NCBI RefSeq assembly: GCF_902713615.1
Contig: NC_052146.1
Span: 69,460,555 to 69,523,237 of the forward strand
DNA length: 62,683 nucleotides
Origin: Scyliorhinus canicula
Taxonomy: Eukaryota
Direction of reading: 5' to 3'
The translations under genes and the position numbers were made by a program. Of this stretch, positions 12,236 to 53,031 are shown piece by piece (within the stretch, counting starts at the first letter, position 1; each line of letters opens with the position of its first letter). The notes under the pieces are model-generated. The model saw nothing but the letters and a program-made list of their open reading frames with translations. It did not search any database and was not told where the DNA came from.

Positions 12236-12239
12236 CTCC

Positions 12240-14079: not shown

Positions 14080-14310
14080 CTCTAAGGGGGCCATATCCTG
14101 CCTGTGCCATATGTTACTGCATCAGTAGGCGTCCATAACACCTCTGTGTTATATGTTACATGACCAGCAGGTGGCCACATCACCTCTGTGTCATATATTA
14201 CAGAACCAGCAGGTGGCCACATCACCTCTGTGTTGTATGTTACATGACCAGCAGGTGGCCATAATACCTCTGTGTTATATGTTGCTGCCCCAATAGGTGG
14301 CAATGTTGCA
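14080..14310 (+). repeat. 42-bp tandem array, about 5.5 units
   Basis: Unit about CACCTCTGTGTYATATGTTACATGACCAGCAGGTGGCCACAT; cores start at 14080, 14122, 14164, 14206, 14248, 14290 (exact 42-bp period). Confidence 0.95.
14164..14301 (+). promoter_or_regulatory. Cluster of candidate CTCF-binding elements (each perfect unit also holds a CAGGTG E-box)
   Basis: CCAGCAGGTGGC x3 (14164, 14206, 14248) and CCAATAGGTGGC (14290) versus CTCF core CCASYAGRKGGC. Confidence 0.65.
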
Positions 14311-14509
14311 TCACATACACAGGATCAGCAGAAATGTGAAATAAATACCTTATCCGATATCTCATCAGTAGAAAGAACATCCCGCCGTTAAATATATAAA
14401 TTTTAACCAGAATATTAACAACTTAAAGACATTTGACTTCGTATTCACCATAATTATTCATACAAACTATTTGATATTTCTGATATTTTTGTCTTGAACT
14501 AACATTTCT

Positions 14510-14640
14510 TGTTCTCTCCTGGTTCTTATTCTCTCCATGCTCTTCTCTCGCCATGCACCTTCTATCTCTGTGTTTGTTCACTCCATGTTTCTCTCCCTCC
14601 GTGCCTTGCTCTCTCTATGCTCTTCTCTCTGCCCACTCCT
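14510..14640. repeat. Degenerate CT-rich pyrimidine tract
   Basis: Repeated CTCTCCATG / CTCTTCTCT-like units. Confidence 0.5.
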
Positions 14641-21111: not shown

Positions 21112-22584
21112 CTGAGGAGGCATATTAGGATGGAAAGGATGTCAGTGCTAACGCCACTGTGCGAGAATCATGGGTTTGAGCCGGGGCGGGGGTGGGGGGG
21201 GGGGGGGGGGGGGAATGGATAGTGTATACAGGAGGTAGAGGGAATGGGACTGGTCAAGGTGAGGGATTTGTATTTGGAGGACGGGTTCGCCAGTCTGGAG
21301 GAGCTAAGGAAGAAGGTAGAATTGCCGAGGGGGAGTGAGTTCAGGTATCTGCAGGTTCGGGTGAAAGTTCTGGAGGGGGTTCCTTAGGTTGCTGGGATCA
21401 CCCTGCTGGAGCGACTGCTACTTCCGGATTTGTAAGGGGATGGAAGAATTGGGGATATATACAAGTGGCTGGGGGAGCAGGGAGGCGAGTGGGTGGTGAA
21501 GATCAAGGAGAAATGGGAACTGGAGTTGGGAGGAGAGATCAATTGGGGAATTCGGAGGGAGGCACTGCAAAGGGTAACAGGATCTCCTCTTGAGCAAGGA
21601 TGAGCCTGATACAGTTTAAGGTGGTGCACTGGGTGCATATAACTCGGCCGAGAATGAGTGGATGCTTTCAGGGGGTAGCAGATGAGTGCAAGAGGTTTCG
21701 GGCGCGGGCCAGCGAATCATGCGCACATGTTTTGGGGTTGCAAAAAATTGGGAAGATTCTGGGCGGGAATGTTTGCAGTCTTAGCCAGGGTAGTGGAGGA
21801 GCAGGTGGACCCGGACCCTTTGATGGCAATATTTGGGGTTTCAGAGACGCCGGAGCTCACGGAGAGGAGGAACACCGATGTTGGGGCCTTCACCTCGCTG
21901 ATTGCACGGCGGCAAATTTTGCTGGCATGGTAGTTGGCATCGAGGGTAGTGGCTTGGTTGGGTGACCCGTACGACTTCCTGTGGTTGGAGAAGATAAAGT
22001 ATGAGTTAAGGGGTTCAGCAGGGGGGTTTGAGAAAAAGTGAGGGATGTTTGTGACCGTGTTTGAGGAGCTGTCCATTGCAGGGGAGTGGGGGGAGGGGGC
22101 TGGAGGGAGCCTTGCAAGTATATTTTCATGAAGTAAATCTTCTTTCCTTTTGAAATAATTGATTGCCTCTGTTCCCAGAAACATTAATGCGTTCATTATC
22201 ACTAAAAGAATCTTACTCAGATCTTCCCTGTACGTCTTACCCAAAGTCCTAAATCTGTGTTTGCTACTCATTACATCTCTACCTCATAGAAAACTACCAT
22301 TGTCTTGTGCACTCCTATCAAATTCCCCTTTACTCCAGGTGAAAAACCCCTGTTATCCAACTTGTACCTAATATTCCTCATCCCTAGAACCATTCTGGTA
22401 CATCTCATCTGTACCATCTTAAGGACCTTCATATCGTCGCTAAAGTGTGGTGATCAGAACTGGATGTAACTCCCCAGTTCTGGCCTAATCAGAGCCACAC
22501 ACACCTTCCTTTCTTTGATACTCAATGCTTCTATTTATGACGTCCAATATTCCATATAAGTTTCTGGCCACGGACAAAAATGCT
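20694..22584. repeat. 196-bp inverted duplication (20694-20889 vs 22389-22584)
   Basis: Manual alignment of the reverse complement: 191/196 identical, ungapped. Confidence 0.95.
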
Positions 22585-22590
22585 ATGTCA
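22130..22590 (-). mobile_element. Decayed CR1 3' fragment
   Basis: CR1 C-terminal nucleotide pattern; donor of the 196-bp inverted copy. Confidence 0.75.
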
Positions 22591-25846: not shown

Positions 25847-25916
25847 ATGCAAATATTAGTCAACTCAAATCTTATTGCCCGTTTTAGGTGATGGACATTT
25901 GCATGCATATTTAAAA
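25847..25916 (+). promoter_or_regulatory. Ig light-chain promoter: two inverted octamers and TATA-like box
   Basis: ATGCAAAT 25847-25854, ATTTGCAT 25897-25904, TATTTAAAA 25908-25916, 110-180 bp upstream of the leader ATG. Confidence 0.8.
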
Positions 25917-26025
25917 TTCAATGACGTTGTCAAGGTTCAAACGTCTTAAGGAGAGGGTTAGAAAGAGCCCAGCAACACATTGTGCCAGAAAGTATTTCAG
26001 TCTGAACCTCAATAGAACCTTCACC

Positions 26026-26074
26026 ATGGCTGAATGGGTTGGAGTTCTTGCAGCACTAATGCTTTGTCTCCACA
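26026..26074 (+). CDS. IGL: IgL leader exon
   Basis: Kozak CACCATGG, hydrophobic MAEWVGVLAALMLCLH, donor GTAAGT at 26075. Confidence 0.95.
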
Positions 26075-29000
26075 GTAAGTGTTACTTTAACCTTCCCTAT
26101 TGCTGCTATTTACATTGTTCCCGTTGTTTGTGCTTGGGTTTAACGTAGCTGAATAACAAACAATAGCGACAATTGTAGAGTTTGACAAATCAATAACTTA
26201 CTTATTTCACCAGGTACGATCGGAGACCCTGTCCTAACCCAGCCAGGATCCATCTCAACCTCCCCGGGGGAAAATGTCAAGATCACCTGTACCATGTCCG
26301 GAGGCAGCATCAGTAGCTACTACACGAGCTGGTACTGGCAGAAACCCGGCAGTGCCCCTGTGCTTGTGTGGAGTGAGTACAGTGGTAAACCTTCCAATAT
26401 CCCCGATCGGTTCATGGGTTCTGTGGACTCATCGAGTAACCAGATGCATTTAACGATCAGCAACGTGCAATCGGAGGACGCCCCAGATTATTACTGTGCT
26501 GTGGCGAGTTCAGGGATATACACCTTTGGAAGAGGAACCAAGCTGAACCTAGACAGTAAGTAAATTAATTGCCGCATTTCTGTAAACATTTTAAAAAACA
26601 CTTTAAAACTATTGGGATGGTTGATTAAATTGGAGCAAATTAAGACTGTTGCTCATAAAATATATTTAGACGCAGCTAACGAACCAGTCAGTGTCTTGCG
26701 ACACGGAAGAGAGTCAGGCACAATTGCGGCCAATTTTACAGGCAGTACCCATGCTTTAGAAAGTGTACAGGAGGAATTTTTTCTCAGATAAAACCTGACT
26801 GCCGAGTTTTAATTTGGAGAGAACCAGAGTGAAACCCGGTTCACCGGGAGCTTCCGGAATGGTGTGGCCGAAATTTGCTCCATTATCTTGCAGCATAATA
26901 GATGCTGAAATATTCACCTCCCGACCAATCAGTAACCCGAGGACGTCAACTAACTCTCATTGCGAGAAGTTTGAAGGGACAGGATAGGATATATTCTTTA
27001 GCCAAGGGACTGTTCGCACTGCTGACTCTTACCTATAATAACAGGGTGAGCAGAAACATCGCAATGTTTCAACGCAAAACGGAGAAACATTTATAGAAGG
27101 AAAAAACAATAGATTAGAAATAGACTCAATGCGCGGTCTTTTCAAAGACGGCGGTTCATTCTGTGTTCCAGAATTCCAAGATTGTATGGATCCCCCCAAA
27201 AAATAGATTGACTCACAGCCCCGGTTAAAAGGTGAAGACGCAAAATCAAAATTTCATTCCACTTCGAGCAATAGCGCACATCAAAACCCTTCTCGGATTC
27301 ATCAGGTTAACGTGACAACTTGCTGCAACTTAATTTCGGTTCTAAATCCAGAGCAAACCGTTCAGAGAAATATTCTCAATCTTCCATTTCGCAATAATCC
27401 CGGAGGAGAACAATAAACGTACTAGTAATCAACTCGTTATAATCATCCCTACTCCTCCAATATCAGCATAACGGAATAACAAGCACCCTAATTGACATTC
27501 CCTTAATATCTCACCGGTTCATTATCTTCCATCCGATTAAATGTGTGTGTATCTCAGACGAGGTTTTCAGATCTGTGTACCTGATTTTTGATTCACTCAG
27601 TTGAACTTCGCTGTTGGTTCTATAATTAGCCAGAAAGGAGTTGTGCTTTGAGTGTTCCGTTTACTCTATTGCCATTTTGATTTGACTTTCAGCTGGCATC
27701 ATGGTGAAAAGGGCTGAGATGAAATACAAAAGGGAAAAGGCTCAATCATATTTTCAGTTATTTATCTAATAATACACACCTGTCAGAAATGTTAGCGTAA
27801 AATCCCTTTCGTTTAGACAATATTATCAACTGATGTCAAAAGCTGCTCAATAATCCCACGGGCGGCACGTTCGCACCGTGGCTAGCACTACTACCTCACA
27901 GCGCAGCGCCAGGGACCGGGGTTCAATTCGGTGGAGATTTTCCATTTGCTCTCCGTGTCTCGGAGGGTTCTTCGGCTTCCTCCCATAGTCCAAAGATATG
28001 CAGTTTAGGTGGATAGGCCATGCGAAATTGGTCCTTAGTGTCCAAGGTGGATTGTCCCTTAGTGCCCAATGTTACGGGGGTAGGGCAGAGTGTGGGTCTA
28101 ACTGCCGGCTCGATGGATCGAACGGTCTCCTTCTGCCCTGAATGGATTATGTGAGTTTCAGATATTTCAGTATCACGGTGTTCATTATAAAGCTCCGATG
28201 ATAAAGGTCAACGGCACTTATCAGGCTGCCCGGAGTGTCAGCCTCCTAGATATAACGTTAAAAAAGTAAGACGAGCTTGTAGGTTCCAAGGAAAAATTCT
28301 CCCAATGTTAAACCGACACGGGGAGGTTTGGGACTGCCAAGACCCGTCCATAGTGCTGACACTGCATTTCAATATTACAACCAATCGTAGCGGCTGGCCT
28401 ATATTACAAAAACTGAACAAAGTAGTATTGTTTCAATCTTTTCTTACATTAAATTAACAATTTACCAGGAGTTTCTCATTGCAGCTGGTGCTTATATGCA
28501 CGGTGTAAACATTCAGTTAAAGAGAGTGTGGCAGTTTATCTTCAACCTCTTACATTGGGTGAAATGTTAGTATCATGGGGATATTTATTTTTAATAATAA
28601 ACTGAAAGAACTATCATTCCTGTAGCAACCCCTCGGGACATCCGAACTTGCTTTACAATCAATTGTGCGCATTTTATTTTCAGGATAGTCCTGTTTGGTG
28701 TGTAAGGAAAGCGGGAGCTGATTTCCGCGCAGCAAGACCCTCAAACACCAATCACCAATTATTCTGTTCAAGCGATATTGGCTGAGAGATAAATAGTGGC
28801 CAATTCATGTTGGTTGCATTGTTTGCATATTGAGGTTGTTGGTGGGTTAGTATTATAGAAAGCATGGGTTAAATAACATGGGTTATTTGTTGGAAACTGT
28901 TTCCTGTTTGGTGAAGATGTTAACACTTGCGACACTGTGAGCCCAAAGGGCCGTGATTAGGGAAGCATACGGTAGCATAGTGGTTAGCACAATTGCTTCA

Positions 29001-30242
29001 CAGCCCAGGGTCCCAGATTCCATTCCCGGCTTGGGTCACTGTGGGGAGTCTGCACGGTCTCCCGTTTGTGTAGGGCTTTCCTCCGGTTTCCTCCCACAGT
29101 CCAAAGATGTGCCGGTTAGGTGGATTGGCCATGCTAAATTGCCCTAAGTGTCCAAAATTGCCCTTAGTGTTGGGTGTGGTTGCTGGGTTATGGGAATAGG
29201 GACTTGGGTAGGGTGCTCTTTCCAAGAGCCGATGTAGACTCGATGGGCTGAATGGCCACCTTCTGCGCTGTAAATTCTATGATATCTATGATCTTCCCGA
29301 AGGGAGTAACTCTTGAATGTAGCCGAACAGTCTTCTGAAGTGTCACACATGAAACCATAGTCGGACCGTGGTTGGGGCTGTGGGGCGACTGGGTGTGAGA
29401 CCGGGAGAGAAACAGTGTGCAATCTACGAAAGAGCAGATCGGCCATGTTAGTGACAGAAATCCAGATATTAGCCCAATGTTTCCCACTTCCGTGAAAATA
29501 GATTCAAGTTGGAATTTTTTTAATCGTTTGTTTAACAGTAAATTGCTTAGAGTCGAGTGTTCTGAGTTTCATTTGCTACCAATCTGTCCTAAGATTTATT
29601 CCGAATGCCAATTATTTGCTTTATATATCCTGATATTATTTCCTGTTAAAATTGTCCGTTAAAATTCTATTTCCTCTTAAGATGTTGCAGGTGTTTACTG
29701 CCATGCAGAAAACGTCGGATATTTTAACAGGTTATATATTGTTCAGGACTGTTGGGACCAGTAGTTGTGCAGTTAACAGTAACGAGAGTTCCTTCTATTC
29801 CATTCACCATAGCTTTGTACAGTGACGTGCAATCTTCAAATATTTCAACAACGGAAAACAGTGGTTACGATTTTGTAGTCAATTAAGAATGAATCGCCTT
29901 TGTCTTATCTACTTTTCAGATCCACAACCCCCCTCGGTGTCCGTCCTTCCGCCGTCATCGGATCAAATCGCAGCGAAGGACACAGCGACCCTGGTGTGTT
30001 TGGTGAGCGGGTTTAACCCGGGAGCTGCGGAGATTGAATGGACTGTAGACGGCAGTGTCAGAGGGAATGGGGTTGAGACCAGTCGGATCCAGCAGCAGGC
30101 GGACAACACGTTCAGTGTGAGCAGCTATCTGACTCTGTCAGCCTCAGAGTGGAACTCACACGAGCTTTACTCCTGTCTGGTCAAACACGAAACTCAGGCC
30201 AATCCGCTGAAAACAAGTATCTCGCGATCCAGCTGTATGTGA
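26026..30242 (+). CDS. IGL: Immunoglobulin light chain, cartilaginous-fish type II (lambda), germline-joined VJ; join(26026-26074,26214-26555,29920-30242), 237 aa
   Basis: Three phase-1 exons with GT-AG introns splice to a 714-nt open frame: MAEWVGVLAALMLCLHSTIG-DPVLTQP...FGRGTKLNLD-NPQPPSV...SRSSCM*. Confidence 0.95.
26214..26555 (+). CDS. IGL: IgL pre-joined V-J exon
   Basis: Acceptor TTCACCAG; Cys23 (KITC), WYWQKP, YYC, CDR3 AVASSGIYT, FGRG J motif, donor GTAAGT at 26556; no RSS or spacer between V and J. Confidence 0.97.
27860..28150 (+). mobile_element. HE1-like SINE in the J-C intron, older copy
   Basis: GGGCGGCACG head, CCAAAGATATGCAG core, CR1-like tail. Confidence 0.8.
28965..29292 (+). 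mobile_element. HE1-like SINE in the J-C intron
   Basis: Closely similar to 42148-42505; tail GTAAATTCTATGAT. Confidence 0.88.
29920..30242 (+). CDS. IGL: IgL constant (C1-set) exon
   Basis: Acceptor CTTTTCAG; PSVSVLPPS, TLVCLVSGF, IEW, YSCLVKH, penultimate Cys (SSCM*) for the H-L disulfide. Confidence 0.97.
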
Positions 30243-33449: not shown

Positions 33450-34203
33450 GGGTGGAGCCATTCCCATTAGGATTAAAACTCTGACTGAGGTGGTATCAGG
33501 GGAGTTTGAAAGGCTGTGTGTCTAGCACTTAGAGGTGCATTAGAGTGCGATGATGATCTCTCTCAAAGAATGAGTGGAGGAGACGTTTGCCCCAAATAAA
33601 GGCTGCATTGACGAAGGTGTTGATGGAGGTGCGGTAGCAAAGAGAGAAGGTGAAGGGAGTGGAGGAGGCATTATCGCAGCATAGCAACCTCGATGGACGA
33701 GCCACTGTGGAGGGTGGCGGAGGTCAATAAAGGGCTAAGAGCCAAGGTGGAGGACCCGGACAACAGTAAAGAGGTTGAATGCTTTCTCGCACTTGAAGAG
33801 TTTGAAAGCTGATGTGGTGATGCTGCAAGAGACCCATCTGAAGGTGAAGAATCAGATGAGGCTCAGGAAGGGTTGGGTGAGCCAGGTGTACCATTCAGGG
33901 TTTGATAGTAGGGCCCGGATTGTGGTGATTTTGGTGGCAAGCAGGTGAGGTTTCAGATGGAGAAGGTGATGGTGGATCAGCGGGGCAGGGACATGATCTT
34001 AACAGATGCACTGGAGGGGAGGTTGGTGGCGTTGGTTAGCGTATATGCCCCCAATTGGGCTAACATGGGGTTTGTAAAGAAAATGATGGCTGCCATTCTG
34101 AATCTGGATACCCATGAATTGATTATGGGGGCTTTTGGAACAGAGTGCTGGAAGCAATTTGGACAGGTCCCAGCTGTGCTCGCTGACCCCATCAGGAGGG
34201 GGT

Positions 34204-34237
<34 letters not shown>

Positions 34238-37200
34238 GGGGGGGGGGGGGGGAAGACATTGGCTGAGCTTATGAGGGAGATGGGAGTATGCAATTTCCTC
34301 CCCAGTCCACAAGGTGTTCTCGAGGGCTCTTTTTGTGATGGGGAAGGTGCTTTTTGCTTGAGGTAGGAGGGCAGAGAATTCGGTAATTGAGATTTTGGAT
34401 CATGCTTTACATTGGACGAATGTAGTACTGGAGAAGGGGCTGCCTCAGAAGCCATGCTGGAGGCTGGATGTGGGGTTGTTGGCAGACCAGAGATTCTGTA
34501 ATAGGATGGGGAAGGTGATTGAGGAGTATGTGGTGTTTAACCCTTCTGTGGAGATCTCACTGTGGATGGTTTTGAAGGCCCTGAAGGCAGTGATGAGGTG
34601 GGAGGTGATTTTCTTTAAGGCTAAGGTGGATAAGGAGGAGAACGTAGAATACCAACCATTGATAGAATAGACTTTTGGAAGTAGTCAGGAGGTACATGGG
34701 GGACGTGAGAAGGGTGAAAGGAGCTGTCTGTGAGTATGGGGAGAAGGCAGGTTATTTATTGGTCAGTCAGCTCTGCAGGCAAGCTGTGGCGAGGGAGATA
34801 GTTCAGATTCGGTATCGGGCGGGTGAGCTGGTGGTTGCTCTGGAGCGGATTTATAAGGTGTTTGAGGAGTTTTATAGGGATATATATAAGTCAGAACCAC
34901 CAGAGGCTGACTGAGAGATGAGGGTTTTTGGGAAGGTTAGAGTGCCAAAGGTAGTGAAGTAGAGTAGGCAGGGCTGGAGGACTCGGTGAAGGTAGAGAAG
35001 GTCAAGACAGCAATTGGGAAGATGCAGCTGGAGAAGGTGGCAGGGTCAGATGAGTTCCTTGTGGGATTTTACAAGAAACTTAAGGATAAACTGCTGCTGA
35101 TACTGGTGGAAACCTCCCTGACCGTTGTGTCAGGGAGGTTTTGCCAAAAAAGATGGGACAGACCTCCATCCCGTTGCTGCTAAAGAAGGATAAGGACCTA
35201 GTGGAGTGTGGGTCCTACAGGATCATATCTCTTCTGAATGTAGATGCCACAATATTAGCAAGGGTGCGGGCATTACATTTGGAGCTGTGCCTTCTGAGGA
35301 TGATTGGACAGCATGACATGGAGCTCTATAAGGGCAGACCATTGTCATCAAATGTGCAGTGCTTGCTGAATGTGGTGGTATTGGATGCGGAGAAGGCATT
35401 TGATTGGGTGGAGTGGAGTTATTTGATTGCGGTGTTCAATAAGTTTGGGATTGGGCCTAAGTTTGTGGCATGGGTGAAGTTGCTGAATAAGGAGACTCCT
35501 TACTTGAGAAAGGACGTACTGGCACTGGAGGGTGTGCAGAGGAGATTCACTAAGTTAATGCCAGAACTGAGGGGGTCGGATTACAAGGAGAGGTTGAGTA
35601 GACTGGGACTGTACTCGTTGGAATTTAGAAGGATGAGGGGGGGATCTTATAGAAACATATAAAATTATGAAGGGAATAGATAGGACAGATGTGGGTAGGT
35701 TGTTTCCACTGGCGGGTGAAAGCAGAACTAGGGGGCATGGCCTCAAAATAAGGGGAAGTAGATTTAGGACTGAGTTTAGGAGGAACTTCTTCACCCAAAG
35801 GGTTGTGAATCTATGGGATTCCTTGTCCAGTGAAGCAGTAGAGGCTCCTTCATTAAAAGTTTTAAAGATAAAGATAGATAGTTTTTTGAAGAATAAAGAG
35901 ATTAAGGGTTATGGTGTTCGGGCCGGAAAGTGGAGCTGAGTCCACAAAGATCAGCCATGATCTCATTGAATGGCGGAGCAGACTCGAGGGGCCAGATGGC
36001 CTCCTCCTGCTCCTAGTTCTTATGATACAATGGCGAGCATGTGCACGAGTGAATTGAATTCAAGGTATTTTAATTGCACCGGGGAACGAGGCAGGGATGC
36101 CCCATGTCCCCTTTCTGTTGCCGATAGAGCCTTTATCCATTGCGCCGAGGAGCTCAGAGTTGTTGGAGGGGATAGTGAAGAGGAAGGGGGCGTGGAACAT
36201 AGGGCGTTCTTGTATGTGGCTGATTTGCTGTTTTGCATCTTGGAGCCGGGTGCCCCAGTGGGGGACATAATGGGTTTGTTTCAAAGATTTGGGAAGATTT
36301 TTGGGATATAAGCTGGACTTGTGGACAAATGAGTATTTTGCGGATTCCACTCCAGGGACGGGAGTCAGTGTAGGGGGCTTCCCATTCTGTGTAGCAGGCT
36401 CTCATTTTAGGTATCTAGGGGAGCAGGTGGCCCGGGACTGGACAGGTCTTCGGAAGTTGAATTTTTCTAGCCTGGTGGGGAGGGTGAAGGCTGATTTGTT
36501 GAGGTGGATTTGTTAGGCCTCCCGAATTTGATGTATTATTACTGAGAAGTGAATACAGCGAAGGTCCGGGGTTGGAATAGGGTAGGCAGTGGCTTTTTGG
36601 GTAAGGATGGAGGTGACTTCACGCAGAGGGTCAGGGTTGCGGGCTCTGGCAGTGGTGCCACTCCCATTGACTCCAGGGAAGTATTCAGGAAGTCTGGTGG
36701 TGGTGTCCATGCGGAAGTTTTGGAGGTAGTTTCAGCAGCACTTTAGGTTAGGATTGGGGTTGAAAGTCATGCCGATCTGGCGGAATCACAGATTTGAGCA
36801 AGGGAGGAACGATGTGAGGTTCTAGGGATGGGAAGAAAGGGGGTTCAGGGAAATTAAGGATCTATTTCTGGAAGGGTAGTTTGTGAGCTTTGAGGAGTTG
36901 AATGAGAAGTTTGGGCTGGTGCGGGAGGAGAGTTTCTGTTACATGCAGGCGCAGGACTTTACGAGGGAGGTCTTTCTGATCTTTCCAATAACGCCTGCTC
37001 CTCTTTGCTGGAGGAGGTGTTGTCAGGTGGGAGGGTTGGAGTGGGAGGTCATCTCTATGGCAGGATATTGGAGGTGGACATGGTGTCCATGGAAGGGATT
37101 AAGGCTAAGTGGGAAGAGAAGTTGGGGACGGCATTGAAGGAGGGATTATGGTGTGAGGTGCTATGGACAGTGAATGCCTTGACCTAATGTGCGACACTGG

Positions 37201-37841
37201 GCCTGATACAGCTGAAGGTGGTGTACAGGGCGCACCTGACTCAGTCAAGGACGAGCCGGCTGTTTGAGCGAGTAGAGGACAGCTGTGAGCAGTGTGGGAG
37301 GGGCGAATACTTGTCATGTGCATATGTTCTCATCCTTCCCGAAGTTGGAAAGGTTCTGGAGGTTAGTTTTCAACAGCATCTCGGTGGTTTTGCACTGAGA
37401 TGTGGGGACCCGTCCCCTGGAGGCCATATTTGGGGTATCGGACCAGCTGGAGTTGCAGACGGGCGCGGGGGCTGATGTTTTAGACTTCACCTCACTGATT
37501 ACTCACAGGCAGGTCCTGTTGGGGTGGTGATCAGCTTCTCCATCATTTGCCTTGGCATGGCGAGGGGACCTATTGGAGCTCTTTGCCCTGGAGAAGGTGA
37601 CATTTGCCCTTGGGGGAAGGGGGGCGAGTGATGGGTTCCACAACAGTTGAGGTTTGTTCATTTTGTATTTTGGAGCGTTGGGTACCATCAAATGTTGGGG
37701 AGAGGGACGAGAGTGGGGTTCTTATTGTGTGTGTATGTGTGTGTGTGTGCGGGGATGGTTAATATAGTGGGTGTTTCTTTTGTTTTTGTTTTAAAATGTA
37801 AAATGTTGAAAATTGGAATAAAAGTACTTTTCAAATAAAAA
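33450..37841 (+). mobile_element. Decayed L1 (ORF2 to 3' end), interrupted by CR1
   Basis: ADVVMLQETHL, VSVYAPNW, SYRIISLLNVDA, LDAEKAFDWVEW, C-terminal segments, A-rich end AATAAAAGT...AAATAAAAA. Confidence 0.85.
35495..36023 (+). mobile_element. Younger CR1 3' end inserted in L1 RT
   Basis: PYLRKDVLALEGVQRRFTKLMPEL...RNFFTQRVVNLWDSL, intact 3' UTR ending TTCTTATG. Confidence 0.9.
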
Positions 37842-40057: not shown

Positions 40058-40550
40058 AATCATGTCCACATGTTCTGGAGATATGCGGGGCTGCTGGGAG
40101 GCGGCGTTCTGGACCCTTTCGAGGGCAGTCGGGTTGAGCTGAAGCCGGACCCTATGGTGGCGACCTTTGTGGTGTCGGAGCTGCTGGAGGGGAAGGAGGC
40201 CAATGTCGTGGCCTTTGCCTCTCTGAGTGCCCGGCAACAGCTTCTTTTGAATTAATGGTCGGTTACGCCACCGGCGGTCGCGGCTTGACTGGGGATTTAT
40301 GAGTTTCTCCAGTTGGGGAAGATCAAATTTGCCTTCAGGGGGTCGGAAGAGGGCTTCATGGTGTGAGGGAGGCGGTTCATGGCAATATTGGGGGGGGGGG
40401 GGGGGGGGGGGTGGGGGGGGGGGGGCTCTTCGTCGTCGGCCGGGGTGGGGGGCGGACGAAAAGGGGAAAAATGTAAAAACTGGAGATTTTGCTTTGTTCG
40501 GATGCAGAATTCATGTAATTTGGAATAATATCTGTATATATATATTTTAA
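40058..40550 (+). mobile_element. L1 3' end, 5'-truncated
   Basis: NHVHMFW zinc-knuckle remnant, KIKFAFRGS terminus, G-rich then A-rich 3' UTR. Confidence 0.8.
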
Positions 40551-41582: not shown

Positions 41583-41759
41583 ACTGTTTAGGAGAATGGC
41601 CGACATTTTACTGTGTTCCCTATCTGTTAATAAGAGTGGCTAATCCGCCGCCTGTGACCGTCTGATTCTAAACAACCTTTTAAAAATATATAATGAATTA
41701 TTCAGTCGCTTTATTGGTGTACGTTGCTCGGACGATGTTCCAGTGGTTTTTTGCAACTG

Positions 41760-42010
41760 AGTGACATTTTGAACGTTTGCAGTGGGAAGCTGGGAGTCTC
41801 GGAAACGGTTTTAGGGTTGGAGTCGCATATATACTAATTAAGGATGGCCGATTTCCTGACCTGAAGAATGTGAATGAAGCAAATCGTTTTTTCAGCAATT
41901 GAGTGGTTCATAGTTAACATCACTATGAGCCTTTTTTTTTCTTCCAGATTTATTTATTAATTGACGAAGAAAGCCCTAGATGGCCACGCGCTTGGACCAT
42001 CAGTCCAGAA
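41760..42010 (-). mobile_element. Deu-domain SINE relic
   Basis: Weak similarity to 11630-11870 and 12240-12590. Confidence 0.4.
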
Positions 42011-42147: not shown

Positions 42148-42505
42148 AGCGGCAGCACGGTAGCATTGTGGATAGCACAATTGCTTCACAGCTCCAGGGT
42201 CTCAGGTTTGATTCCCGCTTGGGTTACTGTCTGTGCGGAGTCTGCACATCCTCCCCGTGTGTGCGTGGGTTTCCTTCGGGTGCTCCGGTTTCCTCCCACA
42301 GTCCAAAGATGTGCAGGTTAGGTGATTGACCATGCTAAATTGCCCTTAGTGTCCAAAATTGCCCTTAGTGTTGGGTGGGGTTACTGGGTTATGGGGATAG
42401 GGTGGAGGTGTTGACCTTGGGAAGGGTGCTCTTTCCGAGAGCCGGTGCAGACTCGATGGGCCGAATGGCCTCCTTCTGCACTGTAAATTCTATGAATTCT
42501 ATGAT
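42148..42505 (+). mobile_element. HE1-like SINE, full-length
   Basis: GGCAGCACGGTAGC head, V-domain core, tail CTGTAAATTCTATGAATTCTATG. Confidence 0.9.
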
Positions 42506-43197
42506 AATTTGGCGATCTTTGTTAAAACTCCACGATAGCATCCTGAACACACTTTTCACTGCATTCATTCACAGACTCCAATGTGTGCGCGATGATTCGT
42601 CCTAGAAACCACGTGTGCAACCATGAACCAGGTATTTCCTCCACCTTTATCCATTCCAAAGTGGTAGCTACCGTATATGTTCGGAATAAACTGAGGGTTT
42701 TTAATTAGATCGTCCCGCTGAACGGACAATAGAGATTGATTCACAGTTTTTACTGCCTGCGCAAATACTCTGCGATTCATTGACCCGTGTTGCTCCATCA
42801 CCAAAGCCCAATTTCACTTCCCCCGGTTTCTACAAGATTGCGCACAAGTGGAAACTGCAATGTATCTCGCTGATGGTCCCGTTATTAAATCGGGACATAT
42901 TTTCTACCCTGTTTTCCCCAGCCTTTATTTATTAAACATCGCCGGAAAACCATCAGCCAACCCAAGAACTGCCATGTTTCCACTTAATGCTGATTTTCTG
43001 CACAACAGATGCAAGATGAAAAAAAAAATCAATTGGCCAGGTATGAGTTTACATATCACCAGGTGTTTCGCACTTGACTATATACTTGTGCCAATGTTCA
43101 CAAATAATTAAAAATCTGATGGGAAATTTAAAAAAAAATCAATGCTGCTGCAGAAGGCTTGCTTGAAATCCTACAGTTCGAATGCTGCTGTGTCATT

Positions 43198-43241
43198 CCT
43201 TTGTGTCATGTGCTACCGAACCACAAGATGGCAATGTTGCA
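43198..43241 (+). promoter_or_regulatory. Single candidate CTCF element homologous to the 42-bp array unit
   Basis: CCACAAGATGGCAA at 43221-43234; 27/35 ungapped identity to 14183-14217. Confidence 0.55.
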
Positions 43242-43759
43242 CTTCGTGTTCGCAAGGCCTTGAAAATATATTTCATGAAGAATGATTAAAATATTTCATA
43301 CCATTAACAACGCTAACAATCCGAGTTGGCTATCTACTATAATTGATTACGCCAACCCTTTGATTAGTCCGAAATTGACTTTAATCATGTTTTCCAGTTT
43401 CTTAGCTCTGCCTTTTAAAGTTTTAACATCATCCCCACAAACCACCCATAGGACATCTTTGCACACAACGCAACCGAAATATTTCACAAAGAAGCTTCGA
43501 GCCCTTCTGTTGAATTACGCTCAATAAAACCCTTCCATTATAGCCGTCGTTAAACGTATTTTAGCCACACCATGTCACTAACCAATATATTAAACACGAC
43601 CATGTTCTTTCCAGTGGTGGTAATCTGTTTCCCGGTGGATAATAGCGGTTACAATTTACACTAACCCCTGCTTTCCAAACAAGAAGTTGGAAGCCCATAC
43701 ACATAGTCGTGAGATTTCTTCAAGCCCACAACTAAACCCAGGCATTCTTTTTAGATCTG

Positions 43760-44820
43760 AGCGTACCTTTGCTCTGTTGTTGTCATGGATCATGATGCAT
43801 TTGTGACTGATTTCGAACCGTGATGCGCGAGTTGCAGAATAACGACTCCTAGACCATCTTTCCACGTATCTGTTGACAATTTAATCTGCTTAGATGGGTC
43901 AAAAATGTGAGGAATGGCATGGTGGTCAGTGAAGTCTTGAGCTTCTTCCACACTTGCTCATGTTGCTCAGCCCAAGTGGAATCCGTTGTCTTGTGCAAAA
44001 GATCACGTAGATGTGTTGTTCTTGCTAACGAGTTTGGAATGAATTTCCCTATAAAATTGATCATAGCCATCACTCTTAAGATGGCCTTCTTGTCGTTTGG
44101 TTTTGGCATCTTGAGAATTGCTTGGATTTTGTCCCTGTCAACTGCATTTATTTTAACTGGAGCATCAGTTTGCATTGTTTTTAAATGCTGGAGAAATTAT
44201 TCTTCTCTTTTATTACTCCAGCAAACAATGATCTTCCATCACTGGAGAATGTGTCTTCCACTGTGCTGACTGATCTGTGGTTGCAGTTAGATTAACAATT
44301 CTGAGCAACATGATTTTTTCCGTTGCATCTGGAATAAAACTTCCCAAATGCTGACACTGCCTTAATTTGTGCCTTTGACCACATATTTTACACAGAAACA
44401 CTTCGGCCTGAACTTTAACCTGTTTGTTGGCGTGCGAGGTGATGCAGGAACTTTTCCACCTTTTTTTGGAATTCTGCCGTCTTTTCGGAAAAAGGGCGGC
44501 AACCGGAATGCTTGCCTCGAAGAAGACTCCACCATTACTGAGAAACATTTCACAATGCTGTGCAGCTGGCTCGTGAGCCTGACAAACCTTAACTATTTGT
44601 TCCAATGACAACTCCGACTCTCTCGGCAACTATTCCTTCAGCTTATTTTCATTCACACCAAACACAATCTGGTCCCGAATCATGAAAGAATCCACCACAG
44701 AAATATTACAAATTTTAGCTTTTAACTTTATATCAGTGCTGAAATGATCTATGGACTCTTCTGTCTTCTGTAAACGTGATCTAAACGCATAGCGTCCAGA
44801 AATTTCAGTCTTTCTGGGGG
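43760..44820 (-). mobile_element. Ty3/Gypsy relic: gag joined to RT-connection region
   Basis: Gag (RSRLQK...MIRDQIVFGV...RESELSLEQIVKVCQAHE, CKICGQRH) and ORF 43849-44175 (DKIQAILKMPKPNDKKAILRVMAMINFIGKFIPN); protease and RT core missing. Confidence 0.8.
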
Positions 44821-46585: not shown

Positions 46586-47374
46586 CTTTGCTTTCTGATA
46601 GCCAACCAATCATCTATTCATGATAACATATGACTGCCTACACATGAGATGTTATGTGTCCATTAATTGCTAATGTGGTGTCTTATGAAATGTCTTTTGG
46701 AATTCTACAGGATCATTTTGATCCATATTATTAATAATAGATTCTAGTATTTCTACTATGACAGGTGGTAAGCTAAATGCCCTCTAGTTGCTTATTGTCT
46801 GTCTCTTTCTGTGTCTGAATAGAGAAGGTACATTTGATATTTCCCAATGCCACAGGGCTTTACAGAATTAAGGGAATTTTGGAAAAATAAAACCAATGCG
46901 TCAATTATGTCATCAGTCACGTCCTTTGTGACACTGGGATGAATTCTATCAGATCCTGGTCACTTGTTAGCCTCTGATTCTAATGAATTACTAAGCAACC
47001 TTTGCCTGGTTCTTTTTTTTTTAAAATAATTTTTATTGAAGAAATTTTTCAAAATACAAACATTTTAACCCCCCCTACATTTAAATTTAAATTATATCAA
47101 AACAAAGTCAAACCCCCCTACTTAACAAAAAGTCCCCCCCACCCCCTACTCGCGCGTCCCCCCCCCCCCCCCCCCCCCCCCGCCGGCGAACCGACAGTCA
47201 GACCAACTTATCATTTCTGGCAGTGTCCTCGGGCAGGCCTTGCCCGTGCCACCACCGCTACCGTACTTCCTTCGTTGTTGTCCCCCCTCCCCCCCCCTCC
47301 CCTCCCCCCCGCCCTCCCCCCCCTCCTCCCGCCCTCCCCTCCCCTCCCGGGTTGCTGCTGTCACGACCTCAGTT

Positions 47375-50300
47375 CTATCTCTGATCTAAGAGGTCCAGGA
47401 AGGGTTGCCATCGCCTGAGAAACCCCTGCACCGACCCTCTCAGGGCGAATTTGATCCTTTCCAATTGGATGAAGTTTGCCATGTCGTTTAACCAGGTGTT
47501 AACACTTGGAGGCCTTTCGTGCCCTCCACTGAATCAAGATCCTCCCTCCGAGCCACCAAGGACGCAAAGGCTAATATTCCAGCCTCCCTCGCCTCCTGTA
47601 CCCCCGGCTCCACCCCAACCCCGAAGATCGCAAGTCCCCATCCTGGCTTGACCCTGGACCCCACCACTCTCGACACCGTCCCTGCCACCCCCTTCCAGAA
47701 CTCCTCCAGTGCCGGACAGGCCCAAAACATATGTGCATGATTCGCAGGGCTTCCCGAACATCTATACACCTGTCTTCACCCCCGAAAAACCGACTCATCC
47801 TTGTCCCCGTCATGTGGGCTCTATGCAGTACCTTAAATTGAATGAGACTTAGTCTCGCACATGACGACGACGAGTTGACCCTCTCCAGGGCGTCTGCCCA
47901 TGTCCCGTCCTCTATCTGTTCCCCCAGCTCTAACTCCCACTTATCTTTCAGCTCCACTACTGGTACCTCATCCACCTCCTGCATAATCTTATAGATGTCC
48001 GAGATCTTCCCCTCCCCGACCCAGACCCCTGATAGCACCCTATCACTCGCCCCCCTGTCGGGAAGCGCGGGGAACCCCTCTACCTGTCGTCTGGCAAATG
48101 CCTTCACTTGGAGGTACCTGAACGTGTTCCCCGGGGGGAGCCCAAATTTCTCCTCCAGCTCTCCCAAGCTCGCAAACCTCCCCTCTATAAACAAGTCCCT
48201 CAGTTGTCTAATACCCACCCTCTGCCAGCTCTGGAATCCCCCTCCTGCATTTCCCGGTGCAAATCTGTGGTTCCCTCTTAATGGTGCCCCTATCAGACCT
48301 CCCACTTCCCCCCTGTGTCGCCTCCACTGCCCCCAGATCTTGAGGGTGGCCGCCACCAACCGGGCTCGTGGTATACCTCGTGGGAGGTAGCGGGCCATGG
48401 TGCCGTTACCAGTGCCCCTAAGCTTATGTTGCCGCAGGACGCCCTCTCCATGCGCTTCCAGGCTGCCCCTCCCTTCCATCATCCACTTTCGTACCATCGA
48501 TGTATTTGCCGCCCAGTAATATCCTGAAAGGTTGGGTAACGCCAGCCCTCCACTATCCCTACTCCGCTCCAAAAAGACCCTCTAACTCTAGGGGTGCCAT
48601 GTGCCCACACATACCCCATGATACTACTCGTTACCTTCTTGAAAAAGGCCCTGGGGAGGAAGATGGGCAGACACTGGAACAAAAACAAGAACCTCGGGGA
48701 GGACCGTCATTTTAACTGACTGCACCCTCCCTGCCAGCGACAGCGGCACCATGTCCCACCTCTTAAACTCCTCCTCCATCTGTTCCACCAGTCCAGAAAA
48801 GTTCAACTTGTGGAGGGTCCCCCAGTTCTTTGCCACCTGCACCCCCAAGTACCTAAAACTTTTAACTGCTCTTTTGAAGGGGAGCCTCCCAATTCCCTCC
48901 CCCTGGTCTCCCGGGTGTATTACAAAGACCTCACTTTTCCCCAGATTTAATTTATACCCCGAAAAGTCCCCGAACTCCGCTAGTATCCCCATTACCTCCG
49001 GCATTCCCCCCTCCGGGTCTGCCACATACAACAACAAATCATCCGCATAGAGCGAGACCCGATGTTCCTCCCCTCCCCTTGTCAGTCCTCTCCACCCCCC
49101 TGAACCCCTCAGTGCCATCGCCAACGGCTCAATCGCTAATGCAAAGAGTAAGGGGGATAGGGGACATCCCTGCCTAGTACCTCGATGGAGCCCAAAATAT
49201 TCTGACCTCCTCCCGTTTGTTACCACACTCGCCATCGGAGCTGAATAGAGCAGTTTTACCCACTTGACAAATCCCTCCCCAAACCCAAACCTTTCCAACG
49301 TCTCCCACAAGTATTCCCACTCCACCCTATCAAATGCCTTCTCCGCGTCCAGCGCTACCACTATCTCCGCCTCCCCCTCCACTGCTGGCATCATGATCAC
49401 GTTTAACAATCTCCGGACATTTGTGTTAAGTTGGCGTCCCTTCACGAACCCCGTCTGGTCTTCATGGATTACCCCTGGCACACAGTCCTCTATCCTGGTT
49501 GCCAGGACCTTTGCTAACAACTTGGCGTCAACATTCAGGAGGGAGATGGGCCTGTAGGACCCGCACTGGACCGGGTCCTTGTCCCGCTTCAAAATCAAGG
49601 AGATCAGGGCCTGCGACATTGTTGGGGGGCAGAACCCCCCCCTCGCGCGCCTCATTAAAGGCTCTCACCAGCACTGGGCCCACCAAGTCCACAAATTTCC
49701 TGTAAAACTCCACCGGGAACCCATCCGGCCCCGGCGCCTTCCCCGCCTGCATCTGGCCTATCCCTTTAATTAGCTCCTGCAGCTCTATCGGCGCCCCCAA
49801 CCCTTCTACCAGCTCCTCCTGTACCTTTGGGAACCTCAATTTCCCCCTCTCCTCTTCGGCGGTTCAGACCTATACAATTCCCTATAGAAGTCCCTAAAGA
49901 CCCTATTCACCTCTTGCCCCTTCTGCACTACGTCCCCACCCCTCTCTCTCACTCCCCCAATCTCTCTGGCTGCATCTCGCTTACGAAGCTGGTGTGCCAG
50001 CATCCTGCTCGCCTTTTCCCCGTACTCATACGCCGCACCCTGCGCCCTTCTCCACTGCGTTTCCGCCTTCCTAGTGGTCAGTAGGTCGAACCTGGCCTGC
50101 AAGCTACGCCGCTCCCTTAATAGCCCCTCCTCTGGTGCCGCCGCATATTTCCTATCCACTTCTAGGAGCTCCCCCACCAGCCTCTCCCTTTCCTGCCTCT
50201 CCTTCCTCTCTCTGTGTGCCCTTATGGAGATCAGCTCTCCTCTAATCACTGCTTTCAAGGCCTCCCAGACCGTCCCCACCTGCACCTCCCCTGTGTCATT

Positions 50301-51151
50301 CGTACCCAGATAGTTCTCAATGCCCGTTCTCACCCTTCTGCACACCTCTTCGTCCGCCAACAGCCCTACATCCAGGCGCCACAACGGGCGTTGATCCCGC
50401 GCCTCCCCCATTTCCACGTCCACCCAATGTGGTGCATGGTCCGATATCGCAATGGCCGAGTACTCCGTGTCCTGCACTCTCGGTATCAGCCCCCTGTTCA
50501 ATACGAAAAAATCTATCCTAGAGTACACTCTGTGGACGTGGGAGAAAAAAGAATACTCCCTCGCCCTAGGCCTACCAAATCTCCATGGGTCTACCCCTCC
50601 CATCTGCTCCATGAACCCCCTTAACACCTCTGCCGCTGCCGGCCTCCTATGCGTCCTGGAACTCGATCTATCCAGCCCAGGGTCTAACACCGTATTAAAG
50701 TCCCCTCCCATGATCAGGCCCCCTGCCTCCAGTCCCGGGATGAGGCCCAGCAGGCGCCTCATAAAACCCGCGTCGTCCCAGTTCGGGGCATACACATTTA
50801 CCAGTACCACATTCTCTCCCTGCAACCTACCCCTCACCATCACATACCTGCCCTCCTTATCTGCCACCACCTCTGCCGCCACAAACGACACCCTCTTTCC
50901 CACCAAATCGCCACCCCCCGGTTCTTGATATCCAAGCCTGAGTGGAACACCTGTCCCACCCACCCCCTTCTCAGGCGGACCTGATCTGCTACCCTCAAAT
51001 GAGTCTCCTGCAGCATTGCTACATCAGCCTTCAGGCCCTTCAGGTGTGAGAAGACCCTTGATCTTTTAACCGGCCCATTCAGCCCCCTTACGTTCCACGT
51101 GATCAATCGGATCGCTGAGCGACCCGTCCCTACTCCCTGTCGATTAGCCAT
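47375..51151 (-). pseudogene. L1 ORF2p (APE-RT-zinc knuckle) with frameshifts
   Basis: RLITWNVRG, QETHL, GGDFN, SDHAPH, DQTGFVKGR, LDAEKAFD, GTRQGCPLSP, YADD, NHAHMFWAC; stop TAG at 47375-47377. Confidence 0.9.
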
Positions 51152-52182
51152 GTCCTTGTCCCTTGCTCGCCCCGGGTCATCCCTCCTTTTCTGACCCGCT
51201 TCCCATAGCGATGCCCCCCCCCCCCCCCCGCTCTCCCCTTCTCGTCCCTGGTCTTTCCAGCAGCAACCCGGTGTCCCCCCCTAAACCCCCCCCCCCTTCC
51301 CCCCCCCCCCCCACCCCCCCCCTGGCTAGGACCCCTCCTAGCCGCGATGTACCCAACATCGTACTCCCGAGAGTCAGCTGGTCTCCTCTGACCCGGCTGC
51401 TCCTGCCACACATTCCGACTCCTCCCGGTTCAAGTGGGGGGGAGGGGCCTCCCCCCCCCCCGCCATTCCACTCTGACCCCGCTCCAGCGCGGGAAGGCCG
51501 CCATTACTGGCCCCGCCCCACTCTTCTCCCCTCCCCTCTCCTCCGTCCCGCGCGCGGGAAAAACAGAGAAAAGCCCGCGCTTTCTCCCGGCCACACCCCG
51601 CCCCGCCATCTTCCACTCCCCCCCATCCCCATCTGCGCCCGTGAAAGATCCCCTTAAAACCCCAGAGAAAGACCCGCATGATCAGCCCACTCCCCCCCGT
51701 CCCGTCTCCCCAACTTAACGATATAAATACCCAATGGCAAATAAATACATAAACACTTAACTACATACTTAAATAACAAAATAATTAACTAGCTGTCAAC
51801 TAACAGTGTGCTCAACCATCACCCTCCATCAAACAGTATAAATAACCACAGATAACCATAACCAGAAAAGAAAGAAAGAACAAAAAACAAGCACCCGAAG
51901 GAAAAGGGTAAAAGGGGTAAATAACTAAGGGAAATTGGAAACGGGAAGAAACACCCCATAAGAAGCCAACGACCCACAATAGAGATTTCAACAGTTCAAA
52001 TATACAGAAACACCCAACAACTCGAAACCTTCAAGATATTCAGAAAAGTCAAACGTTCGAGAAAAAACACCCCAAACAATCCACGAAACTGTTACCCAGT
52101 TCCAACCTGGCCTGAAAAAGAAAAGGGCCACTTGCTCAATCAAGAGTCCCCAGGCGGCTACGACCGCCGGTGCTCCCAGGTT

Positions 52183-53031
52183 TTAGTTCGTGTCCAACTT
52201 TTCCTCTTGTACAAAGGTCCAGGCCTCCTCTGGGGACTCGAAATAATGATGTTGGTCCTTGTAGGTGACCCACAAGCGCGCCGGCTGCAGCATTCCAAAT
52301 TTGATCTTTTTCGCGTTGTAGCACCGCCTTTGTCCGGTTGAACCGGGCCCGCCGCTTTGCCACCTCCGCACTCCAGTCCTGGTACAACCCTTACCGTCGA
52401 GTTCTGCCACTTGCTGCTTTTCTCCCTTTTTGCCCACCTCAGGACTTTCTCTCGATCACTTAGCCGCTGGAACCGCACCAGCACCGCCCTCGGGGGCTCG
52501 TTTGCCCTAGGCCTCCTGGCCATGACCCGGTATGCCTCTTCCAGTTCCAGGGGCGCCGGACCGGCCCCTTCCCCCATCAGGGAGCTCAGCATCTCCGCCA
52601 CATATCTCGGGAGATCCGACCCCTCCAGGCCTTCTTCCAGGCCCAGGATCCTCAAATTTTTCCTCCTCATCCGAGTGTCCAGCTCCTCGAAGCGGCTCTG
52701 CCACTTCATGTGGAGTGCCTCGTGCACCTCCACCTTTGCCCCGATGACTGTGGCCTCCTCCTCCCTCGCGGTCATCTCCTGCTGCAGCTCTCTGATCGAC
52801 GCCTCTTGGGTCGCCTGGGGCTCCCACCAACCTGGTGGTCGTCGCGTTCATGGACTCTAAGAGCTCCACTTTCAGCTCCGTGAAAAAACGGAGGAGAGCG
52901 GCCTGCTGCTCCTCCACCCATTTCCTCCAGTCCTCCGGTGCGCCGCCGGCCGCCATTTTGATTTTCTTCCCCCGCTTTTTTTGGGGAGCTGCTGCCGTTT
53001 TTCTTGCCGCTCCACTCCGGGTACCGACCAT
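52183..53031 (-). pseudogene. L1 ORF1p with three single-base frameshifts
   Basis: ORF pieces 52507-53031, 52158-52775, 52136-52387, 52183-52437 join to a coiled-coil/RRM/CTD protein (RRKNLRILGLEEG, YQDWSAEV, FGMLQPARL). Confidence 0.85.

What the first reader, a model, noticed from the sequence alone, without database searches (positions are those of the whole stretch)
43198..43241. Downstream paralog holds one CTCF-like unit where the upstream copy has an array
Seen: CCTTTGTGTCATGTGCTACCGAACCACAAGATGGCAATGTTGCA aligns ungapped to an array unit (27/35) and shares GGCAATGTTGCA with the last array unit (14299-14310). The three differences within the core (GC>CA, G>A) leave a plausible CTCF site. 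Inference: the ancestral module had one or two sites that expanded to about six on the left. Both face the same way, so the L-VJ-C unit lies between tandem-oriented anchors of unequal strength. Site copy number could tune which clusters are used.
Basis: partly seen in the sequence, partly recalled or inferred. Interest (0 to 1): 0.7.

Follow-up and report, generated by a model that had tools for sequence, protein, structure and literature searches.

The report
Single-copy partner of CTCF-motif repeat
A 44-base stretch downstream of a catshark antibody lambda light-chain gene is a true old copy of one unit of a five-unit repeat upstream of the gene. It still carries a good, same-direction binding motif for the genome-folding protein CTCF, but nobody has shown that CTCF binds it.

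Summary
43198-43241 matches the last unit of the 42-bp array (14267-14310) at 33/44 without gaps. That is the best match in the window outside the array: 60 simulated windows reached at most 29/44, and the nhmmer unit profile gave E 1.5e-4. Homologous blocks flank it on both sides in the same order as around the array, so it is the positional counterpart: one unit on the right, five plus a partial unit on the left. No second unit is detectable on the right.

The unit's motif, CCACAAGATGGCAA, has 2 mismatches to the 14-base CTCF consensus, the same as the array units. It scores 14.6 bits, fourth best in the window, on the + strand like the array. Its differences from the array units avoid the informative motif positions (nominal P 0.002-0.04). 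Neutral decay at the flank rate would keep such a score in 0.2-6.5% of trials. This is suggestive of constraint, not decisive.

Not shown: CTCF binding, the direction of the copy-number change, and any effect on cluster use. Two sites facing the same way do not pair under loop extrusion, and this one faces the next cluster.

The scan found a similar CTCF-motif minisatellite before, between kappa clusters on other DNA of this genome. I rate this a new member of a known kind, of modest interest.

The parts
43198..43241 (+). Single unit, the paralogue of one 42-bp array unit plus the array's 3' flank
   Evidence: 33/44 to 14267-14310. nhmmer unit profile E 1.5e-4. Identical in two individuals.
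43218..43236 (+). CTCF-type motif. The 19-mer PWM span is GAACCACAAGATGGCAATG and the 12-base core is 43221-43232.
   Evidence: 1 mismatch to CCASYAGRKGGC and 2 to the 14-mer. 14.6 bits, fourth best in the window.
14102..14311 (+). Left-hand 42-bp minisatellite of five units, with a 22-bp partial unit at 14080-14101
   Evidence: TRF period 42, 4.4 copies, 81% matches. Units in register. Three exact 12-base cores. PWM 16.9, 16.9, 13.0 and 11.1 bits.
43028..43062 (+). Upstream flank block, homologous to 13980-14014
   Evidence: 28/35 identical; score 21 against 9.9+-1.6 in shuffles. nhmmer 43026-43235 to 13978-14136, E 1.4e-3.
43268..43409 (+). Downstream flank block, homologous to 14357-14534
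   Evidence: Score 26 against 14.6+-2.3, marginal. nhmmer 14271-14509 to 43202-43395, E 6e-4.
42502..42658 (+). Module block homologous to 12079-12240
   Evidence: 109/164 identical; score 44.5 against 12.7+-1.8. blastn E 6e-12.
41744..41920 (+). Module block homologous to 11581-11783
   Evidence: Score 30 against 14.5+-1.9.
26027..30242 (+). Germline-joined Ig lambda cluster between the two module copies. L exon 26027-26075, VJ exon from about 26214, C exon inside ORF 29826-30242.
   Evidence: V-set 7e-17 and C1-set 3e-25. Octamers and leader read. Best relatives are Scyliorhinus canicula 'immunoglobulin lambda-1 light chain-like' proteins.

Best explanation
43198-43241 is the single-copy, positionally homologous counterpart of the 42-bp minisatellite at 14102-14311. 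Both lie at the same place in an old duplicated piece of spacer in the small-spotted catshark Ig lambda multi-cluster locus. That piece spans about 1.7 kb on the right and about 3 kb on the left.

The ancestral spacer most likely already held a CTCF-type site. The right copy kept one unit. The left copy now has five, and its central three were made or homogenised after the duplication.

The right-hand site (CCACAAGATGGCAA, + strand) is as close to the consensus as the array units. It differs from them only at weakly informative motif positions. I therefore take it as a probable, single CTCF site, at about even odds.

If it is bound, it would be a permeable, forward-facing barrier to cohesin loop extrusion. 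It would sit at the upstream edge of the next cluster's domain. It would not be the closing anchor of a loop around this L-VJ-C.

Shown: homology, copy number, motif quality, orientation and substitution pattern. Inferred: binding, barrier function and the history of the copy number.
For: Homology:
- 33/44 against a null maximum of 29.
- Five colinear same-strand blocks each beat their shuffles.
- nhmmer finds the left module as the only significant partner of the right one, with both flanks of the unit aligned.

One unit only.

Motif:
- 1 mismatch in 12, where exact cores occur only in the array.
- 2 mismatches in 14, the same as the array units. The consensus is taken from PMC6746451.
- 14.6 bits, against about 1.2 sites of 14 bits or more expected per window.

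Constraint:
- Differences fall on low-information positions, P 0.002-0.037.
- Random substitutions keep 14.6 bits or more in 0.1-0.9% of trials. At flank-like divergence of 25-42% the figure is 0.2-6.5%.
- The true motif register ranks 1 of 26 for information lost per mismatch.

Other:
- The central units are 30-34/35 alike, against 58-66% identity in the long flank blocks, so they are younger than the duplication.
- The region is single-copy at 80% likeness or more, and the unit is identical in two individuals.
- Loop-extrusion signatures are reported in a skate (bioRxiv 10.64898/2026.10.19.759930).
Against: - There are no occupancy data.
- The core is not conserved at a higher rate than its flanks (9/12 against 24/32).
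- A neighbouring 35-bp block is conserved as well or better (80%).
- One-mismatch matches to the 12-base core are expected 4.3 times per window by chance.
- The graded matrix was recalled from memory.
- The constraint tests rest on 5-8 differences, the array units are not independent of each other, and the finding was selected because it looked like a motif.
- No third copy and no orthologue could be fetched.
Confidence: 0.45

Rival explanations
1. Neutral relic. The stretch is a true paralogue of the array unit, but the motif survived by luck. It is not bound and does nothing. The module is leftover spacer from the duplications that built the multi-cluster locus.
For: - The rate of change in the core equals that in the flanks.
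- Other module blocks are equally or better conserved.
- About one site of this score is expected per window by chance.
- The outer array units u1 (-0.4 bits) and u0 have decayed, so the motif is not kept everywhere.
- The constraint tests are small and post hoc.
Against: Neutral decay at flank-like divergence keeps 14.6 bits or more in only 0.2-6.5% of simulations. All differences avoid the informative positions.
Confidence: 0.4
2. The array and the single unit are anchors of unequal strength, and the number of sites tunes which lambda clusters a B cell uses. This would resemble the tandem CTCF sites that balance promoter choice in the Pcdh and Igh loci.
For: - Same orientation and unequal numbers of sites.
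- The principle is established in mammals (PMC7087399).
- Shark lambda genes are reported as germline-joined (PMC4279169), so choice among them would be transcriptional.
Against: - There are no expression, binding or contact data.
- Only two copies could be examined.
- Two forward sites do not form a loop with each other.
- No copy-number polymorphism was seen at the right-hand unit in two individuals.
Confidence: 0.1
3. The left array is a multimerised E-box element rather than a CTCF element. Its core contains CAGGTG, and GCAGGTGGCC resembles the kappa-E2 site of the mouse Ig kappa enhancer (recalled from memory). It could be bound by E2A-type factors. The right-hand unit lacks the E-box and would then be a dead copy.
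For: CAGGTG is present in units 2-4 only. The right-hand unit reads CAAGATG and unit 5 reads TAGGTG.
Against: The right-hand unit kept the CTCF-informative positions but not the E-box, which fits CTCF better than E2A as the conserved feature. Many CTCF sites contain CAGGTG simply because the consensus allows it.
Confidence: 0.08
4. Independent insertions of the same old mobile element, not a segmental duplication. On this view the shared motif comes from the element's consensus.
For: - The unit profile gives faint sub-threshold hits on the heads of a SINE-like family in the window (E 0.31 to 37). An ungapped 27/44 match occurs at 35990(-).
Against: - A profile of that family does not hit the array or 43198 at E up to 10.
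- Unique flanks on both sides are colinear over 1.7-3 kb.
- The region is single-copy at 80% likeness or more in four runs.
Confidence: 0.05
5. Chance resemblance, with no homology.
For: The stretch is short, at 44 bases.
Against: all reject this.
Confidence: 0.02

Closest known systems
Tandem same-orientation CTCF sites in clustered gene families (mouse and human Pcdh and Igh; Jia et al. 2020, PMC7087399)
   Same: There are several co-oriented CTCF-type motifs between repeated gene units of an antigen-receptor locus. The idea that the number of sites balances promoter or cluster choice is the same.
   Different: Here only motifs are known, not binding. The sites on the left are units of a 42-bp minisatellite. 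The subject of this report is a single site. The genes are germline-joined mini-loci, not a translocon.
CTCF-bound tandem repeats (DXZ4/Dxz4 macrosatellite, PMC3491370; CTCF motifs in human VNTRs, PMC10234305)
   Same: A CTCF motif is carried by a repeat unit, so copy number changes the number of sites.
   Different: Those repeats have kilobase units or are polymorphic human VNTRs. Here the unit is 42 bp, the comparison is between old paralogues (1 versus 5 units), and the right-hand unit showed no polymorphism in two individuals.
CTCF sites at mammalian antigen-receptor loci (VH-associated and intergenic sites, PMC6746451)
   Same: The core consensus, CCASYAGRKGGCRS, is the same, and so is the setting in an Ig locus.
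   Different: Those sites are ChIP-verified and tied to V(D)J recombination. This lambda cluster is already joined in the germline, so any role would be in transcription or insulation.
CTCF-motif minisatellite between catshark kappa clusters
   Same: The genome is the same, and so is the kind of object: a short tandem repeat of same-direction CTCF motifs between light-chain clusters, with a single weaker unit in a related sequence.
   Different: It is a different locus (kappa) and a different repeat. There the 1-versus-many contrast is between species; here it is between paralogues in one genome.

Membership tests
Vertebrate CTCF binding site | Match to the core consensus CCASYAGRKGGCRS or its weight matrix | tested here: met
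   1 mismatch of 12 and 2 of 14, equal to the array units. 14.6 of 27.4 bits, fourth in the window. The matrix was recalled from memory; the consensus is cited from PMC6746451.
Vertebrate CTCF binding site | Occupancy by CTCF in vivo (ChIP-seq, CUT&RUN or footprint) | not testable with these tools
   Only whole-genome DNA runs of the same organism were offered.
Vertebrate CTCF binding site | Informative motif positions kept better than the rest across related copies | tested here: inconclusive
   Differences avoid high-information positions (P 0.002-0.037; register rank 1 of 26). The rate in the core equals the rate in the flank (9/12 against 24/32), and only two loci are available.
Vertebrate CTCF binding site | Conservation in orthologous loci of other species | not testable with these tools
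   No DNA was served for the S. canicula or S. torazame assemblies. No other species appeared in the run search.
Paralogue by segmental duplication | Colinear, same-strand homology of unique flanks on both sides | tested here: met
   Five blocks in order, each above its shuffles. nhmmer E 5.5e-5, 1.4e-3 and 6e-4.
Minisatellite (tandem repeat) | Two or more head-to-tail units at this place | tested here: not met
   TRF reports nothing at 43.2 kb. There is no second unit in 43063-43194 or 43242-43400. The left partner does meet this feature.
Transposon-derived CTCF site (SINE-borne motif) | Significant similarity of the site and its flanks to a dispersed repeat family | tested here: not met
   The SINE-like family profile has no hit at E up to 10. 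The reverse search gives only sub-threshold hits. Depth is single-copy at 80% likeness or more. Older families outside the window could not be examined.
Loop anchor pair around the L-VJ-C | Convergent orientation of the two anchors | tested here: not met
   Both motifs are on the + strand. The only reverse candidate between them is 37408-37426 (14.7 bits, 2 core mismatches).

The most novel reading that the evidence does not exclude
Inter-cluster CTCF sites are an ancestral, selected part of the repeat unit of shark light-chain loci. Their number, changed by minisatellite gain and loss, would set graded insulation between neighbouring germline-joined lambda clusters. That would bias which cluster a B cell transcribes. 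It would be a Pcdh-like stochastic choice system in a locus that cannot use V(D)J recombination to achieve exclusion.
Probability: 0.1. Interest if true: 0.7.

Novelty: new member of a known kind. Interest (0 to 1): 0.33.

Why it matters
Shark light-chain genes sit in many separate clusters, and shark lambda clusters are reported as already joined in the germline (PMC4279169). How a B cell restricts expression to one or a few of them is therefore open; heavy-chain exclusion has been studied in shark (PMC2435157).

A CTCF-type site that was already in the ancestral spacer, and is kept in two old copies, would be a concrete candidate for the boundary between clusters. The 1-versus-5 contrast is a natural experiment on site number. 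One CTCF ChIP or CUT&RUN experiment plus per-cluster RNA counts would test it.

If the site is not bound, this is ordinary leftover spacer.

Tried and rejected
1. Origin from a dispersed element. A profile of the SINE-like family, built from six window copies, hits 14 places in the window at E below 0.01. It hits neither the array nor 43198. The reverse search gives only sub-threshold hits on SINE heads. I rejected this as unsupported from this window.
2. A second, degenerate unit on the right. The alignments do not rise above shuffles.
3. The module as a relic of a leader exon or promoter. The real promoter and leader (25849-26075) are unlike the conserved 35-bp block.
4. Other copies and orthologues.
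   - The run search returned only the same organism.
   - The C-exon search named five S. canicula lambda genes on one 313.6-Mb chromosome and three S. torazame genes on one 202-kb scaffold.
   - The look-up of encoding contigs served no DNA for either assembly, so I stopped.
   - Even with DNA, the module lies 12-13 kb from the gene, beyond the 10-kb flank.
5. Polarising the copy-number change by unit identities. It stays unresolved without an outgroup.
6. Polymorphism as a test of constraint. Five differences lie in 42937-43480 and none in the unit, but only 0.4 were expected there, so this is uninformative.

The exons were searched one at a time by reference.

Full report
**Setting**

The window holds one complete, germline-joined Ig lambda light-chain cluster on the + strand.
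- Two octamer motifs lie at 25849-25856 and 25899-25906, and the leader exon at 26027-26075.
- The VJ exon lies in ORF 26186-26561 (V-set, 7e-17). The C exon lies in ORF 29826-30242 (C1-set, 3e-25).
- The C-exon ORF, searched alone by reference, finds 'immunoglobulin lambda-1 light chain-like' proteins of Scyliorhinus canicula on a 313.6-Mb chromosome at 87-92% identity. It also finds lambda chains of many other sharks and rays.
- A review states that cartilaginous-fish light chains lie in many V-J-C clusters, and that all lambda genes studied so far are germline-joined (PMC4279169).
- An L1-like LINE fills 47.5-53 kb on the minus strand.

**The observation**

The 44-mer stands at 43198-43241 as quoted. 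The array at 14102-14311 is real. TRF gives period 42, 4.4 copies and 81% matches. In register there are five units plus a 22-bp partial unit before them.

How the 44-mer matches the array:
- It matches the last unit (14267-14310) at 33/44 without gaps, unit 3 at 30/44 and units 2 and 4 at 28/44.
- The last nine columns are identical to the last unit only. Those columns are the unique 3' flank of the array.

Why this is more than chance:
- 33/44 is the best match in the window outside the array. The maximum in 60 simulated windows, over both strands and five units, was 29.
- The local alignment scores 23 against 10.7+-1.5 in shuffles.
- An nhmmer profile of the five units finds 43199-43240 at E 1.5e-4, the only significant hit outside the array.

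**Homology of the surroundings**

Five blocks lie in the same order and on the same strand.

| Left | Right | Score | Shuffles |
|---|---|---|---|
| 11581-11783 | 41744-41920 | 30 | 14.5+-1.9 |
| 12079-12240 | 42502-42658 | 44.5 | 12.7+-1.8 |
| 13980-14014 | 43028-43062 | 21 | 9.9+-1.6 |
| the unit itself | the unit itself | 23 | 10.7+-1.5 |
| 14357-14534 | 43268-43409 | 26 (marginal) | 14.6+-2.3 |

- Window-wide nhmmer searches with the right module return only the left module (E 5.5e-5, 1.4e-3, 0.0037).
- The left post-array flank returns 43202-43395 (E 6e-4).
- Both flanks of the single unit are therefore homologous to the flanks of the array. The right copy has one unit where the left has five.
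- No second unit can be found on the right.
- Each copy has taken up its own SINE-like insertion since the duplication, at 12876-13017 on the left and 42370-42528 on the right.
- Contigs from four DNA runs of two samples from two studies cover the unit. They show no difference inside it and no 42-bp indel. Depth is single-copy at 80% likeness or more.

**Motif quality**

The consensus CCASYAGRKGGCRS is quoted from PMC6746451.
- The 12-base core matches exactly only at array units 2-4. Shuffles give 0.22 exact matches.
- With one mismatch allowed, five further sites appear, among them the last array unit and 43221-43232. Eight matches in all were found against 4.3 expected.
- Over 14 bases, the right-hand unit and array units 2-5 all have two mismatches.
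- I also used a graded matrix recalled from memory. It is JASPAR MA0139-like and should be treated as approximate.
- On that matrix the right-hand site scores 14.6 of 27.4 bits, fourth in the window. The array units score 16.9, 16.9, 13.0 and 11.1, and unit 1 scores -0.4.
- About 1.2 sites of 14 bits or more are expected per window.
- All of these motifs are on the + strand.

**Is the motif kept by selection?**

By rate, no. Identity to the last unit is 9/12 in the core and 24/32 outside it. A 35-bp block 133 bp upstream is 80% identical.

By kind of change, there is a signal.
- The three core differences all fall on the degenerate S, Y and R positions.
- The summed information at the differing positions is lower than for random placement (P 0.002, 0.037 and 0.037 against units 2/4, 3 and 5).
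- The same number of random substitutions keeps 14.6 bits or more in 0.1-0.9% of trials.
- Per-site decay at the flank-like divergence of 25-42% keeps that score in 0.2-6.5% of trials.
- As a control that keeps the real pattern of mismatches, I slid the matrix across the 44 aligned columns. The true register ranks 1 of 26 for information lost per mismatch in all four comparisons.

These tests rest on five to eight differences. The array units are not independent of each other. The finding was also chosen because it looked like a motif. I read the result as suggestive: about even odds that the site is a real CTCF site kept from the ancestral spacer.

**History of the copy number**

- The central units are 30-34/35 alike, far above the 58-66% identity of the long flank blocks. 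They were made or homogenised after the duplication.
- The outer units are about as far from the central ones (u1 22-24/35, u5 27-28/35) as the right-hand unit is (24-27/35).
- With no outgroup, 'one unit that expanded on the left' and 'a small old array that collapsed on the right' both remain open. The first is somewhat simpler.

**Mechanism**

If the site is bound, it is one forward-facing, permeable barrier to cohesin. Under the convergent rule, as summarised in bioRxiv 10.64898/2026.10.19.759930, it cannot pair with the forward array. It looks towards the next cluster.

The module therefore reads better as the upstream boundary element of each repeat unit of the locus than as a pair of anchors around this gene. 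The only reverse candidate between the two is 37408-37426. It scores 14.7 bits but has two core mismatches.

Tandem same-direction CTCF sites are known to act as insulators and to balance promoter choice in the Pcdh and Igh loci (PMC7087399).

**Rivals**

- A neutral relic is nearly as likely as a functional site.
- An E-box reading of the array (CAGGTG in units 2-4) leaves the right-hand unit dead. It fits the conserved positions less well.
- Independent transposon insertions and chance are rejected by the colinear unique flanks and by the profile searches.

**Literature and novelty**

A full-text search for CTCF together with shark immunoglobulin clusters found no paper on the subject. CTCF-bearing tandem repeats are known elsewhere.

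Earlier notes of this scan had already followed up the array (s1-249191) and the duplicated spacer (s1-249190). They also hold a similar CTCF-motif minisatellite between kappa clusters on other DNA of this genome (s1-286366).

My tests agree with the first two on structure and homology. I could not reproduce the stated origin from a dispersed element with the repeats present in this window.

**Limits**

- The third copy of the module, mentioned in s1-249190, lies outside the window.
- The run search returned one species only.

Noticed in passing
window 13980-14014 and 43028-43062: This is the best-conserved block of the duplicated module, at 28/35 identical. Both copies keep a CCAAT box on the minus strand (ATTGG) followed by CAG|GTATG, which looks like a splice donor. 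It is unlike the real leader exon at 26027-26075.
   Followed up: partly
window 37408-37426 (-): A reverse-strand CTCF-like site of 14.7 bits with 2 core mismatches lies 7 kb downstream of the C exon. It would be convergent with the array and divergent with the unit at 43218.
   Followed up: partly
window 12876-13017 (+) and 42370-42528 (-): Copies of a SINE-like family have been inserted independently into the left and right module copies. The family's head reads ...GCAGAAGGAGGCCATTCGGCCCATCGAGTCTGC... and has at least 14 copies in the window.
   Followed up: yes
window 43684-43800: A high-copy dispersed repeat starts here. Summed contig depth rises from about 5 to 1000-1900 in all four runs.
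   Followed up: no
window 43232-43315: There is a small extra depth, one more contig in three of four runs, just after the unit. It could be a diverged paralogue such as the third copy of the module.
   Followed up: no
window 47571-53031 (-): An L1-like LINE with ORF1 (Transposase_22, weak), an endonuclease (Exo_endo_phos) and a reverse transcriptase (RVT_1, 9e-41), in several ORF pieces.
   Followed up: partly
window 20690-20889 and 22389-22588: A 200-bp inverted repeat pair at 97% identity, 1.5 kb apart. It could be the ends of a young DNA transposon or a local inverted duplication.
   Followed up: no
protein P0004: A 125-aa 'hypothetical protein' of Aeromonas veronii on a 652-bp contig is 88% identical to this shark lambda C exon. 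It is most likely host (shark) DNA contaminating a bacterial assembly.
   Followed up: no
window 29826-30242: No database protein matches this C exon exactly. The best S. canicula lambda proteins are 87-92% identical. This cluster may therefore be unannotated, or annotated outside the length range that was searched.
   Followed up: no
window 34198-34252, 40390-40425, 47282-47348, 51286-51322: Long poly-G and poly-C tracts of 36-67 bases.
   Followed up: no
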